From sequence record MK250019.1: a DNA stretch of 64,000 bases; one strand, written 5' to 3'. Numbering within the stretch: the first letter of the stretch is position 1; every line of letters starts with the position of its first letter. A program made the translations under genes and the position numbers. The notes beneath the pieces are model-generated. The model was not told where the DNA came from, searched no databases, and saw only the letters and a program-made list of their open reading frames with translations. Below are positions 10,139 to 29,973 of the stretch, in pieces.

Positions 10139-10561
10139 ATGTTAATTATTCTATCAATAGTATTAATTATTGTAGGATTATTTCTTGGAATTTTAATAGG
10201 TACTTTAGGATCATTTGGTGATTCTGAAATACCTATTAAAGAAGATAAAATAATCAAGAGATGTTTGTTATTTAATATAGCATCTCGGTGTGATAAAATT
10301 ATACTTGTATGTTGTACACCATTCGGATGGTTAGGAATTCTTTTATTATTTGTATGTTGTTTTGTATTTCAACATATTATAGGAATTATGTTTATTAGTC
10401 CTTTACCTATGATGGAATTTCTTAATACATTTGAAGACAAAATATATAGTTTTGCACTACTATATTTAGTACCTATGTTTGGTGGTTATTTTATAGGTTA
10501 TAATTATATGAATAATTTTATTAAACGAATAGAAAAAGAAGAACATGAAGAAAGGAACTAA
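10139..10561 (+). CDS. Hypothetical multi-pass membrane protein
   Basis: 140 aa, three to four hydrophobic segments. Confidence 0.65.
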   Translation: MLIILSIVLIIVGLFLGILIGTLGSFGDSEIPIKEDKIIKRCLLFNIASRCDKIILVCCTPFGWLGILLLFVCCFVFQHIIGIMFISPLPMMEFLNTFEDKIYSFALLYLVPMFGGYFIGYNYMNNFIKRIEKEEHEERN

Positions 10562-11039
10562 ATTTTATGTTATATTAGGTTATAATACAGAAACAGAAGC
10601 CTGGTATGGATATGTAGAAAATTCTTTTTCTATGGGTGCAGATAAAAATAGAATTAGAACATTTTCTACATGTAGAGCAGATTATCCTTGGAAAGATAGA
10701 TCATTTTCAGAGAGAAAACGAATAGCGAAAGCATATTTGAAGAAACATGGTTATAGATGTAATTATGCTCGTGATTATATTATAGATGCAAAGATGAATC
10801 CTAATTCACCAAATCAATGGATTTATTTTTATTTGCGAGATATTGTAGACAATCTTAATAAAAAACATTATAATAATTGTTATTGGAAAGTATATAGAGT
10901 AAATTCTAAGTTTTGTCCTATTAATGTAAATATGAATGAATATTACAAAACATTAGTAAATAAGAAATTTAGGAAGTCTCTTGACAAATTTCAATTAAGA
11001 AATCAAGAATTTTCTGTAAAGGAAGTTTCAAAAGATTAA
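10545..11039 (+). CDS. Hypothetical basic protein
   Basis: 164-aa ORF overlapping upstream stop. Confidence 0.65.
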   Translation: MKKGTKFYVILGYNTETEAWYGYVENSFSMGADKNRIRTFSTCRADYPWKDRSFSERKRIAKAYLKKHGYRCNYARDYIIDAKMNPNSPNQWIYFYLRDIVDNLNKKHYNNCYWKVYRVNSKFCPINVNMNEYYKTLVNKKFRKSLDKFQLRNQEFSVKEVSKD

Positions 11040-11047
11040 AAATATAT

Positions 11048-11300
11048 CGGTACGGCTCTAAAGGAGAGAGCATCATTTATGATTAATGATGACGAAGATT
11101 TGTTCGTAAGTTAATCTTTACTAAGAGAATATACAATATTTAGTTATATAGAAGTAATTTAATTGTTATAATGCGAATACAATTTTATATGAAACTATAT
11201 ATGTCATTTATGAGATTATAGTGAAGAATAGCATTTACAGTAACTATAATAAGATGATATAAACAATATAACTTCTGTGGTTCGATTCCACACGTACTGA
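11048..11300 (+). ncRNA. tRNA-like RNA with about 190-nt structured insert
   Basis: Acceptor CGGTACG/CGTACTG+A, D-like hairpin GCTC..GAGC, stem CATCATT/AATGATG, canonical T arm TGTGG-TTCGATT-CCACA at 11276-11292. Confidence 0.6.
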
Positions 11301-11319
11301 CTAATAAACATATAACATT

Positions 11320-11538
11320 ATGAAAGAAGAAATTAAATTCTTAGGTAAAACACCAAGAGAAATTGCAGAACGTTACTTCAATAAATCATATGAAGGTAAA
11401 GAACGATATGATATTTTAGTTGAAGGCTTTATTGAGGGATTTAATTATCTATTTCCTCATTATGATATAGCTAATACTTTGGTTGAAACATTTGAACGAA
11501 TTAAAGAATTAGAAAATAAAGATAAAAAAGATTCATAA
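11320..11538 (+). CDS. Hypothetical protein
   Basis: 72-aa ORF, TAA stop. Confidence 0.6.
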   Translation: MKEEIKFLGKTPREIAERYFNKSYEGKERYDILVEGFIEGFNYLFPHYDIANTLVETFERIKELENKDKKDS

Positions 11539-11561
11539 TTATTTTTTTATTTGAAATAAAA

Positions 11562-11573
11562 TATGTATCTTTG
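11562..11573 (+). promoter_or_regulatory. Bacteroidetes-type -7 promoter driving a non-coding unit
   Basis: TATGTATCTTTG followed by about 1 kb with no credible + strand ORF. Confidence 0.7.
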
Positions 11574-11593
11574 TATTGTAAATAATGAACACC

Positions 11594-12086
11594 TATAAGT
11601 GTTAAGTAACATAAGGATGGAAATCTTATGGTTCGTAAGTAGTAATATCGAATAGTCCGCATAATAGGAACATGTCATTATTTTAACATTTATATAAGAA
11701 TATACTACATGTCTTATATGAGCGTCAGGAGTATTGTAACAGAGTCGACGTATTTACATTTTTAGAGGCGCAGTTTTTAAATCTGACTATTCTACGTAAA
11801 GTAGTGTTCTATGTAAAGTAGTGAAGTGCAAGATACGGCGTCAGTACAAGTCTATATAATAAGTTGCAAATAAAAATAGAAACTGTTAAAATTCGTATCT
11901 AATTTGTCTGTATTTCACAATGGTTAATGAGGTACATGAAAAGTGATTTGGAAGAATCATTATAAACATATTATGATTAAGATAACGTTCAACTAAGCTA
12001 TATAATAATAGTAAGTACAGCGCTGAAAATATATGTTTATATGTATTGCGGTTGTGGTTCGATTCCACATACAGACACGACTTATA
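11594..12086 (+). ncRNA. Large structured ncRNA candidate (about 490 nt)
   Basis: Closing stem TATAAGT/ACTTATA, GGAA-capped hairpin, long-range AATAGTC/GACTATT and AGATACG/CGTATCT helices, embedded tRNA-like domain. Confidence 0.5.
11906..12077 (+). ncRNA. tRNA-like domain with expanded anticodon loop
   Basis: Perfect acceptor GTCTGTA/TACAGAC+A, D loop AATGGTTAA, TACAT/ATGTA stem enclosing about 110 nt with 10-bp ATAAACATAT/ATATGTTTAT helix, T arm identical to the 11048 element. Confidence 0.6.
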
Positions 12087-12299
12087 TTAATGATGAAAAG
12101 TCTGCAATTAACAAAATATAAAAACATCTTAATGTACTGTTGATTATATGTTTTAATTTTGTTAACTAAGAGATTCTTGTAAATTATAAAAATTTACAAA
12201 TCGAGGGGAACGCATAACGGCAATTATGTTAGTACTTGGCGTTTAATGAAATGAATATGTATATTTGCCGATGTGCATATGAGTGACATTAAATGATAA

Positions 12300-12394
12300 A
12301 ATTATAATAGTGTAGCGGTTCGCACGCCCGTTGGTAAAACGGGAAGGGTTTATGTTTGAAAGCATATTAGGGGTTCGACTCCCGCTTATAAACA
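12300..12394 (+). tRNA. Degenerate tRNA-Tyr(GTA)-like gene
   Basis: D loop AGCGGTT, stem CCCGT/ACGGG with loop TG-GTA-AA (G33), long variable arm, T loop GGTTCGACTCC; acceptor only 5 bp and bulged T stem. Confidence 0.5.
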
Positions 12395-12401
12395 ATTAAA
12401 T

Positions 12402-12550
12402 TACATAATGTTCTCACGAAGAGCGAGCATCGGAAGGTGAGCAATTTAGAAAGATGTTTAAGAGTGATCATATTAAATTGATTTCTAACAGAAATACGGT
12501 GACGTAGGAGCTGAAAAAGAACAAACGTATGGTAATGTTAGCATTATGTA
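12402..12550 (+). ncRNA. Structured RNA candidate (about 150 nt)
   Basis: 11-bp closing stem TACATAATGTT/AGCATTATGTA; GNRA hairpins CATC-GGAA-GGTG and ACG-GTGA-CGT. Confidence 0.45.
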
Positions 12551-12616
12551 TTTAAAAAATATTAGTCCTCACAGACTTTACATTTTTTATAACTTTAAAA
12601 TTTTGAATTTAATATT

Positions 12617-12651
12617 AAATCCGATGCTTGTAATAAGTATCGGATTTTTTT
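12617..12651 (+). terminator. Intrinsic terminator closing the non-coding unit
   Basis: AAATCCGATGCTT/AAGTATCGGATTT stem plus T tract. Confidence 0.8.
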
Positions 12652-12664
12652 AATTCATAAAAAA

Positions 12665-12676
12665 TATGTATCTTTG
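12665..12676 (+). promoter_or_regulatory. Bacteroidetes-type -7 promoter element
   Basis: TATGTATCTTTG upstream of nadR. Confidence 0.75.
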
Positions 12677-12706
12677 TAATATATTAAATAATAATTAAAT
12701 AATTAA

Positions 12707-13867
12707 ATGATTAAGAATATAGGAATTTGTTTTGGCGGTTATTGTCCTATGCATCAGGGACATCTTGATCTTATAATGAAAGCAAAGAAAGAAAATGATA
12801 TTTGTTATGTGGTTGTTTGTGGTTATACAGATGAACCACGAGGTAATGAATTAGGTCTTAATATTAATAATAGAAAAAGACTTATTAAAGAGTTTTTTAA
12901 AAATGATGAACTTATTCGAGTTCTTACTGTAAATGATACAGAATTAGGTATTGATGAAAGTATGTCTGAACATAATTGGAAAGTATGGACAGATTATGTA
13001 AAATATCAAATTACAGATGATCTTTTGGGTGGAGGTCCGACATTTCCATTTAGTCCTGATGAAAGGATTGAAGCGCATGAATTGAAACTTACATTCTATG
13101 TTGGTGAAAAGTTCTATGTTGAATCATTGAATAAATTAAATATTAATGCAGTGTTAGTTGGTTACGATGAGAATTCTCCATCTAATAGAAGTAATGATAT
13201 ATCAGCAACATATATTAGACAAAATCCTCAATATTATTGGGATAAGATTGTATCAACATTTAAACCTGCATTAACAAAGAAAATTCTTGTATTAGGTACA
13301 GCATCAGAAGGGAAATCAACACTTGTTAAAGATATTGGTAATTATTTTAATATACCATATACAACAGAATTCGGTAGGGATTATATGGAGAAACATTGTA
13401 TGTTAGATCCTGATATTACTGTAAATGATTTTGTTGAATTCCTTATTGGACAGAGACAATATTATTTTGATGCTTTGAATGATAAAGGAAATAAGGGCGT
13501 TATCATTTCAGATACTGATAATCTCGTTACACTTATGTATGCAAAAGCATATGTATCTGATAATAATATGCAAATTACTGAAGATGAATATAACAATATA
13601 TTGAAACCACTTGCAAAATCATTACAAACAGGTGTTTCATGGGATGTAATTTATCTTATCAAACCGCATAATAAATTTGTTGATGATGGAACACGTTACA
13701 TGAATCAATCTTCAATAGATGAGAGAATGAAGAATTATAAAATTCTTTTATCATTACTTGAAGAGTTCGGTTTACTTGATAAAGTAATTGAATTGAATGG
13801 TTCTTATATGGATCATTTTAATTATGTTAAGGATTATATCACAAAATTATATGATAAAGAAAATTAA
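12707..13867 (+). CDS. nadR: NadR-like bifunctional NMN adenylyltransferase / ribosylnicotinamide kinase
   Basis: N-terminal FGGYCPMHQGH (HxGH), ISATYIR, P-loop GTASEGKST, EFGRDY, SDTD, FVDDGTR. Confidence 0.9.
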   Translation: MIKNIGICFGGYCPMHQGHLDLIMKAKKENDICYVVVCGYTDEPRGNELGLNINNRKRLIKEFFKNDELIRVLTVNDTELGIDESMSEHNWKVWTDYVKYQITDDLLGGGPTFPFSPDERIEAHELKLTFYVGEKFYVESLNKLNINAVLVGYDENSPSNRSNDISATYIRQNPQYYWDKIVSTFKPALTKKILVLGTASEGKSTLVKDIGNYFNIPYTTEFGRDYMEKHCMLDPDITVNDFVEFLIGQRQYYFDALNDKGNKGVIISDTDNLVTLMYAKAYVSDNNMQITEDEYNNILKPLAKSLQTGVSWDVIYLIKPHNKFVDDGTRYMNQSSIDERMKNYKILLSLLEEFGLLDKVIELNGSYMDHFNYVKDYITKLYDKEN

Positions 13868-14516
13868 TAATATATTATATTCAGAGTTTATAGAAGGAAG
13901 AAATATTAATGAACATTTGTTTATGCTCATTGGTATTTTCCTTCAATTAATTGCATGGTATATAACTAAAGATTCATTGATTTCTTTAATATCAGGTGTA
14001 ACTGGTATTATATCTGTTATATTATGTTCACAAAGAAAGATTTCATTTTATTTCTTCGGCTTTATACAATTAGGAACATATATGTATCTTGCATGGCAGC
14101 AAAGATTTTATGGTGAATTAATAGAGAATATATTTTACATTATTACTATGTTAATAGGTATTGTAGTATGGTTAAAAAATTATAATACTGAAGAACAAAT
14201 AGTAGAATCTAAAAGACTTTCTGATAGGTTATTCTATATAATATGTAGTATAATGGTGTTTATCTGTGTATTATTTGGTTATTATATGAAATACTTTACA
14301 GATAATACACAACCATTTATGGATTCATTTTCAACAGTACCTGCATTTATAGCACAGACATTGTTAATGTTACGATATAGAGAACAATGGATATTCTGGA
14401 TTATAATTGATGTTGTTTCTATATTCATGTGGATGTTTGCTGATAATTGGATAATGGTTATTCAATTTATATTTTGGACAATGAATTGCATATATGGTTA
14501 TAGAAAATGGAAATAA
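13851..14516 (+). CDS. pnuC: PnuC-family nicotinamide riboside transporter
   Basis: Multi-TM protein, PFMDSFSTV..AQTLLMLRYREQWIFWIIIDVV motif, overlaps nadR stop. Confidence 0.9.
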   Translation: MIKKINNILYSEFIEGRNINEHLFMLIGIFLQLIAWYITKDSLISLISGVTGIISVILCSQRKISFYFFGFIQLGTYMYLAWQQRFYGELIENIFYIITMLIGIVVWLKNYNTEEQIVESKRLSDRLFYIICSIMVFICVLFGYYMKYFTDNTQPFMDSFSTVPAFIAQTLLMLRYREQWIFWIIIDVVSIFMWMFADNWIMVIQFIFWTMNCIYGYRKWK

Positions 14517-28995: not shown

Positions 28996-29973
28996 ATGAT
29001 AAAGAAACATCCAATTTTACATGGCGCATGTATTGATAATTTTCATAAATTATATAATGCAGATTTATATGAATAGTATGGTATATTAAATTATGAAGAT
29101 CCGACATTTCGTTTAAAAATTGAAGTAATTGCTACAGAAATATATAATACTACAAAAAATGCAACTAAACCATATTATAAAGAATTTTATGTAAAAAATG
29201 TATATAACTTTATATGGAAATTAAATATTGTCGTAGATTCAACATTTAATTTTTTATCAGTATTTACTCCTGAAGTTGAATTTAAATATAATTATTAGAA
29301 TCATATAGTTGAACATGCAGCAATATTTATAAATCCATTAAAATTTTATAATATAGATTCTCTTGTATCTGCAATATTTCATGAAATAAAACATATATTT
29401 GATCATACAATAACAATTACAAATGATATTCAATAGAAAGAAGTATTATTTAGAGATTATTTGGTACAAGAATATTAGTTATACGATAAACCAGAAATAA
29501 CATTCACATCATATAATAAAAATTTAATACAAAATAATGAAAGTTCTATTATGGAATATTTTAGTTCTTTTATTGATTATGTTGCATCTTCAGAATGGAC
29601 AGCATATTTAGAAAATATCGATAATAGTTATAAACATGAATTAAATAATGTTAAAAGAATAAAATTTTTAAAAGAGAAATATCCATATATACAAATTAAA
29701 AAGTTTATATATTTCAATATTCAATCAGGTAATTACTTATTAATATATTATAATATTGAAAATTATATTAATGATATATTAGAATTAAATTTAAATATTA
29801 TAAATAAAAAATATCAGCGAAATTTTAAAGATATATATGGTGTGAATACTATACAGCAAGTATTAAAAATATATTTAAAAAGAATTCAAAAAGTAAAAAT
29901 ACGAGCAAAGAAAATATTTAATAATGTATATAAAAATTCATATTTAGAAAAAACAATAAAGAGTGAATAGTAA
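28996..29973 (+). CDS. Putative zinc metallopeptidase-like protein (HExxH)
   Basis: ATG 28996, AIFHEIKHIFD motif, in-frame TAGs, ends TAG-TAA inside a terminator stem. Confidence 0.6.

What the first reader, a model, noticed from the sequence alone, without database searches (positions are those of the whole stretch)
11048..11300. tRNA shell wrapped around a 190-nt insert
Seen: a 7-bp acceptor stem with discriminator A, a D-like arm, and a T arm identical (TGTGGTTCGATTCCACA) to that of the 11906 element. The insert has its own helices (ATTATAGT/ACTATAAT, ACGAA/TTCGT, ATTGTT/AACAAT). The positions equivalent to U8/A9 and U33 are missing, so it is unlikely to decode. Inference: the tRNA frame may recruit RNase P/Z or CCA addition to process or stabilise a cargo RNA, or act as a decoy for tRNA-targeting defences. 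An unusual intron is also possible.
Basis: partly seen in the sequence, partly recalled or inferred. Interest (0 to 1): 0.68.

Follow-up and report, generated by a model that had tools for sequence, protein, structure and literature searches.

The report
tRNA-shaped structured RNA of Lak megaphage
A 255-base gene in the Prevotella megaphage Lak-A2 encodes a conserved folded RNA whose two ends form the acceptor stem and T arm of a tRNA but which cannot decode codons; it most likely borrows the tRNA-processing machinery to be cut out and stabilised, and its job is still unknown.

Summary
The window is the last 64 kb of Prevotella phage Lak-A2. The tRNA shell at 11047-11301 is real. An 8-bp closing stem (a 7-bp acceptor plus a -1:73 pair) and a T arm identical to that of the 11906 element enclose about 220 nt.

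It is single-copy and present in all Lak A, C and B genomes. Between the A and B clades the closing stem keeps pairing through three double changes. An inner 8-bp helix shows one compensatory change. A 7-bp long-range helix is invariant. The 5' domain has lost all sequence similarity yet folds into three hairpins in both clades.

It is not a decoding tRNA. ARAGORN and Rfam do not call it, the "anticodon" loop has A33 and varies between strains, and the B form has no cloverleaf. No removable intron gives a normal tRNA in both clades. RNA-library contigs show only the unspliced form.

It is not a tmRNA; Lak has a genuine one elsewhere. It is not a Y RNA, and it is not a copy of a host tRNA end.

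Best reading: a non-decoding tRNA-framed ncRNA, probably descended from a class II tRNA, cut out by RNase P and RNase Z and given CCA. Devoto et al. 2019 described "enigmatic introns" in Lak tRNAs but did not list this element.

Verdict: a new variant of a known kind, of moderate interest.

The parts
11047..11054 (+). 5' strand of the closing (acceptor-like) stem P1: a 7-bp acceptor at 11048-11054 plus a -1:73 pair (T11047-A11300).
   Evidence: Pairs with 11293-11300. Lak-B has ACAGTATA/TATACTGT: three pairs changed on both sides, and G.U becomes A-U. Strain variants C11053T (giving U.G) and G11049A (giving A-U) keep the pairing.
11055..11071 (+). Hairpin H1, the D-arm-like one: GCTCT / AGAGC with loop AAAGGAG.
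   Evidence: In Lak-B it is replaced by an 11-bp hairpin of unrelated sequence at the same place.
11071..11091 (+). Hairpin H2, the anticodon-arm-like one: 7-bp stem and 7-nt loop UAUGAUU (11078-11084), with A at position 33.
   Evidence: Loop positions 11081 and 11083 vary among Lak-A strains. Lak-B has a different 7-bp hairpin with an 11-nt loop.
11092..11107 (+). Hairpin H3, the variable-arm-like one: ACGAA / TTCGT.
   Evidence: ARAGORN reads it as a class II variable arm once 11114-11276 is deleted. Lak-B has TTCAGTA/TACTGAA here.
11108..11142 (+). Single-stranded linker holding the conserved block GTTAATC-N-TTACT (11110-11122).
   Evidence: 74% identical between Lak-A and Lak-B, against 41% in the 5' domain.
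11143..11149 (+). 5' strand of the long-range helix P-long (GTTATAT).
   Evidence: Pairs with 11266-11272. Predicted by RNAalifold on two alignments and invariant in all sequences.
11161..11184 (+). Hairpin H4: AATTGT / ACAATT with a 12-nt loop.
   Evidence: Lak-B has a hairpin of different sequence at the same place (ATAT(T)GC / GCATAT). RNAalifold finds three pairs changed on both sides.
11215..11250 (+). Hairpin H5: 8-bp stem ATTATAGT/ACTATAAT and a conserved 20-nt loop (11223-11242).
   Evidence: One compensatory A-U to G-C change; 100% of cells paired. This region is 78% identical between the clades.
11266..11272 (+). 3' strand of P-long (ATATAAC), followed by a 3-nt 'variable loop' TTC.
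11276..11292 (+). T arm: TGTGG-TTCGATT-CCACA.
   Evidence: Identical to the T arm at 12053-12069. In Lak-B only the three G-C pairs next to the loop remain.
11293..11301 (+). 3' strand of P1 (CGTACTGA) and the conserved C11301. No CCA is encoded.

Best explanation
Element 1 is a gene for a non-decoding, tRNA-framed structured RNA of about 255 nt in Lak-A and about 280 nt in Lak-B. It is specific to the Lak megaphage lineage.

Its two ends form a tRNA minihelix: an 8-bp acceptor-like stem stacked on a T arm. Between them lie three hairpins and a roughly 130-nt domain closed by a 7-bp helix. In Lak-A the three hairpins still look like the D arm, anticodon arm and long variable arm of a class II tRNA.

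Inferred mechanism:
1. The RNA is transcribed together with the upstream ORF (10545-11039). No promoter or terminator lies between them.
2. Host RNase P cuts at the 5' side of the minihelix and RNase Z cuts behind the discriminator.
3. A CCA-adding enzyme adds CCA, perhaps the one that Devoto et al. annotate in Lak.
4. The tRNA-like ends protect the RNA from exonucleases.
5. The conserved inner surfaces, namely the H5 loop and the GUUAAUC-N-UUACU linker, then bind an unknown protein or RNA partner.

Shown here: the structure, its conservation and covariation, its lack of decoding features, single copy, and presence in RNA libraries in unspliced form.

Inferred only: the processing steps, the stabilising role, and the existence of a partner.
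For: - **Source.** The window is the end of Lak-A2 (MK250019.1). The element is 98-100% conserved in Lak-A1 and Lak-C1 and recognisable in all nine Lak-B genomes.
- **Closing stem.** It keeps 8 bp between clades with three double changes and G.U to A-U. Two independent strain variants keep the pairing.
- **Inner helices.** H5 has a compensatory change, P-long is invariant, and H4 is replaced by another hairpin. Measured on the 3' core, 95.9% of cells are paired, against 28-57% when partners are slid. Only 2 of 500 shuffles reach the observed covariation score.
- **5' domain.** It is only 41% identical between clades but folds into three adjacent hairpins in both, with z -2.1 and -2.8.
- **Strain variation.** Of 12 polymorphic sites in Lak-A strains, 9 lie in loops or junctions and 2 keep a P1 pair.
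- **Coding.** No ORF lies in the element under table 11 or TAG=Q.
- **tRNA calls.** ARAGORN and Rfam do not call a tRNA.
- **Processing enzymes.** No CCA is encoded. Lak carries cca and rnlB genes according to Devoto et al. Table S7.
- **Expression.** Contigs of four RNA libraries cover the element without a skipping joint. Devoto et al. report that non-coding regions of Lak are among its most highly expressed parts.
Against: - No end mapping exists. The RNA-library data are contigs, which cannot show starts, ends or levels, and DNA may be present in such libraries.
- Only two diverged clades are available. Each covariation is therefore in effect one event, and the statistics are modest.
- The Lak-B T stem has only 3 standard pairs. 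That weakens the case for a tRNA-like elbow in that clade.
- No partner, and no conserved complementarity to the neighbouring RNAs, was found.
- Neighbouring proteins give no functional hint.
- The inner 5' strand GUUAUAU can also pair locally in both clades, so part of the fold is ambiguous.
Confidence: 0.5

Rival explanations
1. An intron-bearing tRNA gene of the kind Devoto et al. reported in Lak phages. The insert would be spliced out and a functional tRNA would result, for example a class II tRNA-Ser(UGA).
For: - Lak tRNAs Tyr, Phe, Thr and Gly carry 79-141-nt inserts.
- Element 2 of the same locus is about 97 nt in Lak-B and 172 nt in Lak-A, so inserts do come and go here.
- With 11114-11276 removed, ARAGORN reads the Lak-A form as tRNA-Ser(tga) with a variable arm.
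- H3 followed by A-rich ..UUAAUC loosely recalls the 'small hairpin + AUUAAAUUAAA' start of the published introns. This resemblance was judged by eye only.
Against: - Only 6 of 1254 deletions give a call for Lak-A and 0 of 1254 for Lak-B. Known intron-bearing controls gave 143 (Tyr) and 821 (Thr), though Phe gave only 3, so the test is imperfect.
- The insert would lie between the variable arm and the T arm, not at 37/38.
- The loop has A33 and U37, and its 'anticodon' differs between strains: TGA or TAA.
- The Lak-B 5' hairpins are 11, 7 and 7 bp long, which is not a cloverleaf.
- The insert shares no sequence with the known introns.
- RNA-library contigs show only the unspliced form.
Confidence: 0.1
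2. A decoy or sponge. The tRNA-like frame would present the RNA to a host factor that recognises tRNAs, such as an anticodon nuclease or another tRNA-targeting defence, a modification enzyme, or EF-Tu. It would titrate or block that factor.
For: - The ends are tRNA-like and decoding features are lost.
- The locus holds three aberrant tRNA-like genes side by side.
- Phages are known to counter tRNA-directed defences (established knowledge; reviewed in PMC7824862).
Against: - Nothing here tests it.
- The part most like a nuclease target, the anticodon-like loop, is the least conserved part.
- The Lak-B form lacks an anticodon-arm mimic.
- The conserved parts are the inner domain, which no known tRNA-binding factor recognises.
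Confidence: 0.15
3. A processing signal only ('tRNA punctuation'). The minihelix would exist so that RNase P or RNase Z cuts the transcript behind the upstream ORF. The inner part would have no function of its own.
For: - The element starts 8 nt after the stop codon of ORF 10545-11039 and ends 19 nt before ORF 11320-11538.
- No promoter of the repeated strong type and no terminator lies directly upstream.
Against: - A 70-nt minihelix or tRNA would be enough for that.
- Blocks of the inner domain (the linker, P-long, H5 and its loop) are 74-89% identical between clades, while unconstrained parts have fallen to about 41%.
- The three-hairpin architecture is also kept.
- The downstream ORF is absent in Lak-B.
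Confidence: 0.12
4. A decaying tRNA pseudogene disrupted by an insertion, with no present function.
For: - The Lak-A 5' part looks like a degraded class II tRNA.
- The Lak-B T stem is weak.
- The element is confined to one phage lineage.
Against: - Compensatory changes occur in P1, H5 and H4.
- Inner blocks are conserved.
- Hairpin architecture is retained where the sequence has randomised.
Confidence: 0.08
5. A small tmRNA-like RNA with a tag reading frame.
For: - The topology resembles tmRNA: acceptor and T arm enclosing a large insert closed by a helix next to the T arm.
- ARAGORN at an 80% threshold proposes a permuted tmRNA with a 19-residue tag.
- In 8-bp numbering a G.U falls at 3:70 in Lak-A2.
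Against: - Rfam tmRNA gives no hit here.
- A genuine tmRNA lies elsewhere in the Lak genome: A1 223029-223421, 54 bits, with G3:U70.
- The G.U is A-U in Lak-B and in one Lak-A strain.
- The proposed tag frame is hit by non-synonymous changes and a stop in Lak-B, read from the alignment.
- About 90 nt lie between the acceptor and the closing helix, where tmRNA has a short D-loop analogue.
Confidence: 0.02

Closest known systems
'Enigmatic introns' and pseudo-tRNAs of Lak megaphages (Devoto et al. 2019, PMC6784885)
   Same: - The same genomes are involved.
- tRNA-shaped genes are far longer than a tRNA because of an internal insert.
- Rfam gives no hit for the insert.
- Sequences are identical or near-identical across cohorts.
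- The published introns themselves contain a 7-bp acceptor-like stem plus a GGTTCGAATCC T arm.
   Different: - Element 1 is not in their tRNA or intron tables. Their A1 list starts at 108 kb, whereas the element lies at A1 29015-29269.
- Its outer frame is not a decodable tRNA.
- The insert is not at 37/38 and has no inner T arm.
- It shares only the T loop with the introns.
tmRNA (Rfam RF00023)
   Same: Acceptor stem and T arm formed by the two ends. A large structured insert is closed by a helix that abuts the T arm. No anticodon.
   Different: - No conserved G3:U70.
- No conserved tag frame.
- No pseudoknot pattern recognised by Rfam.
- A long three-hairpin 5' domain.
- The phage has a real tmRNA elsewhere.
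Bacterial Y RNA-like YrlA RNAs (Chen et al. 2014, PMC4201824)
   Same: Non-decoding RNAs with a tRNA-like module (T arm, D-like arm). They occur in bacteria and some phages. According to that paper (not re-read here; listed), their tRNA-like module is handled by tRNA enzymes.
   Different: - From my own knowledge of that family: in YrlA the RNA ends form the Ro-binding stem and the tRNA-like module is internal. Here the ends form the acceptor stem.
- No TROVE/Ro60 gene is present in Lak-A1.
tRNA-like elements used as processing handles (mascRNA of MALAT1, gammaherpesvirus-68 tRNA-miRNA chimeras, engineered 'tRNA scaffold' RNAs); cited from established knowledge, not tested here
   Same: What it would work like: RNase P and RNase Z recognise a tRNA-shaped module, define the RNA ends, and stabilise or release a cargo RNA.
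   Different: In the natural cases the cargo lies beside the tRNA-like module. Here it lies inside it, as in the engineered scaffolds. None of them is from a phage.

Membership tests
Canonical decoding tRNA | 7-bp acceptor stem continuous with a 5-bp T stem, and a T loop of the TTCRANY type | tested here: met
   Met in Lak-A. In Lak-B the T stem has only 3 standard pairs.
Canonical decoding tRNA | U8/N9 spacer and a 3-4-bp D arm | tested here: not met
   Lak-A has a 0-1 nt spacer. Lak-B has an 11-bp hairpin at this place.
Canonical decoding tRNA | 5-bp anticodon stem, 7-nt loop with U33 and a purine at 37, and a conserved anticodon | tested here: not met
   A33 and U37. The loop varies between strains. 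Lak-B has an 11-nt loop.
Canonical decoding tRNA | Recognised by tRNA finders or covariance models | tested here: not met
   ARAGORN default and intron modes, and Rfam at gathering score and at E up to 10, give no call.
Intron-bearing tRNA (Lak type, Devoto et al.) | Removing one internal segment at or near 37/38 restores a normal cloverleaf | tested here: not met
   6 of 1254 deletions for Lak-A, all with the insert after the variable arm; 0 of 1254 for Lak-B. Controls gave 143, 821 and 3.
Intron-bearing tRNA (Lak type, Devoto et al.) | Spliced form present in RNA | tested here: inconclusive
   No skipping joint in contigs of four RNA libraries, but contigs drop rare forms.
tmRNA | G3:U70 alanine identity pair | tested here: not met
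   A G.U is present only in some Lak-A strains. It is A-U in Lak-B and in L039.
tmRNA | Conserved tag reading frame and a match to the tmRNA model | tested here: not met
   No Rfam hit. The frame proposed at low threshold is broken in Lak-B (alignment). The true Lak tmRNA scores 54 bits elsewhere.
Y RNA-like (YrlA) | Partner Ro60/Rsr (TROVE) protein encoded nearby or in the genome | tested here: not met
   No PF05731 match in the whole Lak-A1 record; the control genomes did give matches. A host-encoded Rsr was not examined.
Y RNA-like (YrlA) | RNA ends form the Ro-binding stem, with the tRNA-like module internal | tested here: not met
   Here the ends form the acceptor-like stem.
Group I or other self-splicing intron, or self-cleaving ribozyme | Match to a curated model | tested here: not met
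   No Rfam family at E up to 10 in 10900-13500.
Phage attP copy of a host tRNA 3' end | T arm plus 3' acceptor strand identical to a host tRNA gene | tested here: not met
   The 21-nt T-arm/acceptor strings of elements 1 and 2 are absent from 185,579 prokaryote species genomes. Covariation of the distant 5' strand argues for an RNA-level feature.
RNase P / RNase Z / CCA-adding substrate ('works like') | Cleavage at the minihelix ends and CCA addition | not testable with these tools
   Only the geometry, the lack of an encoded CCA, and the annotated Lak cca gene speak for it.

The most novel reading that the evidence does not exclude
Lak megaphages may carry a whole family of tRNA-framed RNAs. 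It would include this element, element 2, further long shells in the tRNA cluster, and the tRNA-like cores of the published 'introns'. These would be cut out by the tRNA end-processing enzymes (RNase P, RNase Z, CCA addition), with the phage RNA ligase resealing host tRNAs where the element sits inside one. That would be a protein-enzyme, tRNA-mimicry-based way of excising and launching structured RNAs, distinct from group I/II and archaeal/eukaryal tRNA splicing.
Probability: 0.1. Interest if true: 0.8.

Novelty: new variant of a known kind. Interest (0 to 1): 0.52.

Why it matters
Lak phages are among the largest phages of the human and animal gut, and about a tenth of their genome is non-coding and highly expressed. 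This element shows that part of that non-coding fraction consists of conserved, folded RNAs built on a tRNA frame.

If the frame does recruit RNase P, RNase Z and CCA addition, it would be a natural counterpart of the engineered 'tRNA scaffold' used to express RNAs. It could also offer a route to understanding the unexplained inserts in Lak tRNAs. For annotation, it is a case where tRNA finders miss a conserved gene.

Tried and rejected
- **ARAGORN with introns allowed.** It joins the 5' end of element 1 to the 3' end of element 2 as 'tRNA-Cys with a 937-nt intron'. I rejected this as an artefact of the identical T arms.
- **Low-threshold ARAGORN tmRNA call.** Rejected: the tag is not conserved and a real tmRNA lies elsewhere.
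- **MFE folds of the whole element.** These are unreliable in this AT-rich sequence: whole-element z is only -1.7 and the inner domain -0.5. Comparative analysis was used instead.
- **Search for more diverged homologues.** All of the following returned only Lak-A- and Lak-B-type copies, or nothing:
  - three DNA patterns in IMG/VR;
  - one pattern in metagenomes;
  - protein-anchored synteny through the NadR-like and upstream genes;
  - a covariance model of the 3' core run on four distant Lak-like contigs.
- **Paralogues.** None exist in Lak-A1 or Lak-B2 beyond weak T-arm hits.
- **Shared insert sequence.** None was found among element 1, element 2, other long shells and the published introns.
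- **Conserved complementarity.** None was found between the conserved loops of element 1 and the neighbouring non-coding operon.
- **Neighbouring proteins.** No informative family.
- **RNase P RNA.** By eye I considered that 11582-11905 might be an RNase P RNA because of an AGUCCG motif. I rejected this: the motif is not conserved in Lak-B and there is no Rfam hit.
- **Read laying.** The first request was answered 'busy'. The repeat of the same request gave contigs only, so no RNA ends, strand or levels could be read.

Full report
**Source and setting**

BLAST places the window at the end of Prevotella phage Lak-A2 (MK250019.1; window position x corresponds to record position x + 477299). Lak-A1 and Lak-C1 are 97.5-98% identical over 10500-13000, and the nine baboon Lak-B genomes about 75%. 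Lak phages are 540-550 kb megaphages that read TAG as Gln. Devoto et al. [quoted passage not shown]

**The observation**

The shell is there as described.
- Acceptor strands lie at 11048-11054 and 11293-11299, with discriminator A11300.
- A D-like hairpin lies at 11055-11071.
- The T arm lies at 11276-11292.

The T-arm core occurs twice in the window, here and in the element at 11906-12078, against 0.01 expected by chance. A scan for 'T arm plus a matching 7-nt acceptor strand within 450 nt' finds only these two convincing shells in 64 kb.

T11047 pairs with A11300, so the closing stem is 8 bp. Element 2 has the same -1:73 pair in both clades (read).

ARAGORN calls neither element, with or without introns. 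Rfam gives nothing at gathering score or at E up to 10. No ORF lies in the element under table 11 or with TAG=Q.

**Comparative anatomy**

The element is single-copy and sits at the same place in every Lak-A, Lak-C and Lak-B genome. It was also found in IMG/VR and metagenome contigs of these two types.

*Closing stem.* Lak-A has TCGGTACG/CGTACTGA and Lak-B has ACAGTATA/TATACTGT. Three pairs changed on both sides, and G.U became A-U. Within Lak-A, C11053T gives U.G and G11049A gives A-U.

*Helices recovered by RNAalifold* on the full element and on the 3' core:
- a long-range helix GTTATAT/ATATAAC (11143-49/11266-72), invariant;
- hairpin H5 (11215-22/11243-50), with one A-U to G-C compensation;
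- hairpin H4, replaced by a different hairpin in Lak-B;
- the T arm.

*Pair counts on the 3' core.* 95.9% of cells are paired, against 28-57% when the partners are slid. Only 2 of 500 shuffles reach the observed covariation score. These numbers rest on two clades and are therefore modest.

*5' domain (11055-11108).* It is only 41% identical between the clades, which is about random for this composition. Even so it folds into three adjacent hairpins in both, with z -2.1 and -2.8.

*Conserved blocks.* The linker with GTTAATC-N-TTACT, P-long and the H5 region are 74-89% identical.

*Strain variation.* Of 12 polymorphic sites among Lak-A strains, 9 fall in loops or junctions. Two keep a P1 pair, and one touches the terminal pair of H1.

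**Is it a tRNA, with or without an intron?**

In Lak-A the three 5' hairpins have the sizes of a D arm, an anticodon arm and a class II variable arm. If 11114-11276 is deleted, ARAGORN reads 'tRNA-Ser(tga)'. Several points argue against a real tRNA:
- Only 6 of 1254 possible deletions give a call for Lak-A, and none of 1254 does for Lak-B. Intron-bearing Lak tRNAs used as controls gave 143 (Tyr), 821 (Thr) and 3 (Phe) calls.
- The loop has A33 and U37.
- The 'anticodon' differs among strains: TATGATT, TATGACT, TATAATT.
- The insert would lie after the variable arm rather than at 37/38.
- The Lak-B hairpins are 11, 7 and 7 bp long.
- Contigs from four RNA libraries cover the element unspliced and show no skipping joint. 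Contigs can miss rare forms.

The element is absent from the tRNA and intron tables of Devoto et al.. It probably descends from a class II tRNA, but it is not a decoder now, and I find no support for splicing.

**Other identities tested**

- *tmRNA.* The topology is similar, but there is no Rfam hit and no conserved G3:U70. The tag frame offered at low threshold is broken in Lak-B. Lak has a genuine tmRNA elsewhere, found by the T-loop census of Lak-A1 and confirmed by Rfam at 54 bits.
- *Y RNA-like.* The ends are in the wrong place and the phage has no TROVE gene.
- *Host tRNA 3' end (attP).* The T-arm/acceptor strings of elements 1 and 2 occur in none of 185,579 prokaryote genomes. Covariation with a strand 250 nt away also points to an RNA-level feature.
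- *Repeat or mobile element.* It is single-copy, and its insert shares nothing with element 2, with other long shells or with the published introns.

**Context**

The element starts 8 nt after the stop of ORF 10545-11039. In Lak-A it ends 19 nt before a 72-codon ORF that Lak-B lacks. No copy of the repeated strong promoter lies upstream of it.

That promoter (11540-11583) occurs about 18 times per Lak-A genome. It heads a separate non-coding operon that runs to a strong terminator at 12617-12647. The operon holds:
- a 324-nt structured RNA with ten covarying pairs;
- element 2;
- a conserved spacer;
- an aberrant 93-nt tRNA-like gene.

Element 2 is about 97 nt in Lak-B, where it gives a weak Rfam tRNA hit of 22.5 bits. 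In Lak-A it is 172 nt, because about 76 nt sit inside its anticodon-stem-like helix. Its acceptor shows four compensatory changes.

The locus is therefore a cluster of tRNA-framed and other structured RNAs. The Lak-A1 tRNA cluster contains at least two more unannotated long shells.

**How it most likely works**

The features kept by selection fall into two groups. One is the minihelix formed by the ends, which is the part of a tRNA that RNase P, RNase Z and the CCA-adding enzyme recognise (established knowledge). The other is a set of inner helices and loops.

No CCA is encoded. Devoto et al. annotate a CCA-adding enzyme and an Rnl2-type RNA ligase in Lak.

I therefore take the element to be a stable non-decoding RNA. 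It would be cut out of the upstream mRNA by the tRNA end-processing enzymes and protected by its tRNA-like ends. Its conserved inner surfaces would bind an unknown partner (confidence 0.5). Structure and conservation are shown here; processing, stability and the partner are inferred.

The rivals are given in the Rival explanations section with their odds: decoy, pure processing signal, intron-bearing tRNA, pseudogene and tmRNA-like RNA.

**Limits**

- Only two diverged clades exist in the collections I could search.
- All searches for more distant copies failed.
- The reads tool returned contigs only, so ends, strand and abundance remain unknown.

**Verdict**

The non-decoding inference is supported. 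The processing/stabilising idea is the best available reading but is untested, and the intron idea is not supported.

The element is a new, unannotated variant of a known kind: tRNA-like non-coding RNAs, alongside the insert-bearing tRNA-like genes already noted in Lak phages. It is confined to one phage lineage. Interest is moderate (0.52).

Noticed in passing
window 11906-12078: Second tRNA shell (acceptor GTCTGTA/TACAGAC, discriminator A, same T arm). In Lak-B the orthologue is only about 97 nt (L003 2203-2300, weak Rfam tRNA hit of 22.5 bits). Lak-A therefore carries about 76 extra nt inside the anticodon-stem-like helix TACAT/ATGTA. The acceptor shows four compensatory changes between clades. 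The T arms of elements 1 and 2 are identical in Lak-A and both reduced to GGG/CCC in Lak-B, which suggests concerted evolution.
   Followed up: partly
window 12301-12393: The only ARAGORN call in the window, 'tRNA-Tyr(gta)' of 93 nt, is aberrant. It has G at position 33, an A.A mismatch at 1:72 and a 3-bp T stem, and falls below Rfam's tRNA threshold. The Lak-B orthologue has ATA in place of GTA (L003 2521-2614, 23.1 bits).
   Followed up: partly
window 11582-11905: A 324-nt non-coding RNA directly upstream of element 2, conserved between Lak-A and Lak-B. RNAalifold predicts 56 pairs, 10 of them with compensatory changes. There is no Rfam match. It has the highest word depth of the stretch in two RNA libraries, although the repeated promoter next to it may inflate that figure.
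   Followed up: partly
window 11540-11583 (and 12644-12678): A roughly 44-nt promoter-like block (TTTG ... TATCTTTG, Bacteroidota type) is repeated about 18 times per Lak-A genome and 14 times per Lak-B genome. RNA-library contigs from other copies diverge exactly at its two ends. A strong intrinsic terminator at 12617-12647 closes the non-coding operon.
   Followed up: partly
Lak-A1 record MK250015.1 223029-223421 (-), locus L023: A phage-encoded tmRNA (393 nt, GGGGACA.../TGTCTCC-A, G3:U70; Rfam RF00023 54 bits, E 2e-19). tmRNA is not mentioned in Crisci et al. 2021; the other Lak papers were not checked for it.
   Followed up: yes
Lak-A1 record 497002-497238 (-) and 499338-499564 (-), locus L026: Two more unannotated long tRNA shells (237 and 227 nt) lie inside the main tRNA cluster. 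The first becomes tRNA-like to ARAGORN after many internal deletions; the second never does. T arms without a found 5' partner also occur at 216078 and 525786.
   Followed up: partly
Lak tRNA introns (Devoto et al. Table S6; A1 500019-500111, 496422-496500, 492368-492481): Each published intron has the same build: a 4-5-bp hairpin with an A-rich loop, then AUUAAAUUAAA-like linker, then a 7-bp acceptor-like stem with its own GGTTCGAATCC T arm. The paper notes a possible tRNA inside the Thr intron only.
   Followed up: partly
window 12707-14516: NadR-like gene (cytidylyltransferase-like domain + AAA_28) followed by a PnuC nicotinamide-mononucleotide transporter gene. This looks like an NAD salvage module directly downstream of the non-coding operon.
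   Followed up: no
loci L036, L038, L040, L042, L047 (metagenome contigs, GC 33-40%): The loop pattern used to fish for element 1 also hit an unrelated conserved motif, TTGTGAA-N-AATTGCACTTAAAGTAACGGGTGC, in five non-Lak contigs. It may be some other regulatory or RNA element.
   Followed up: no
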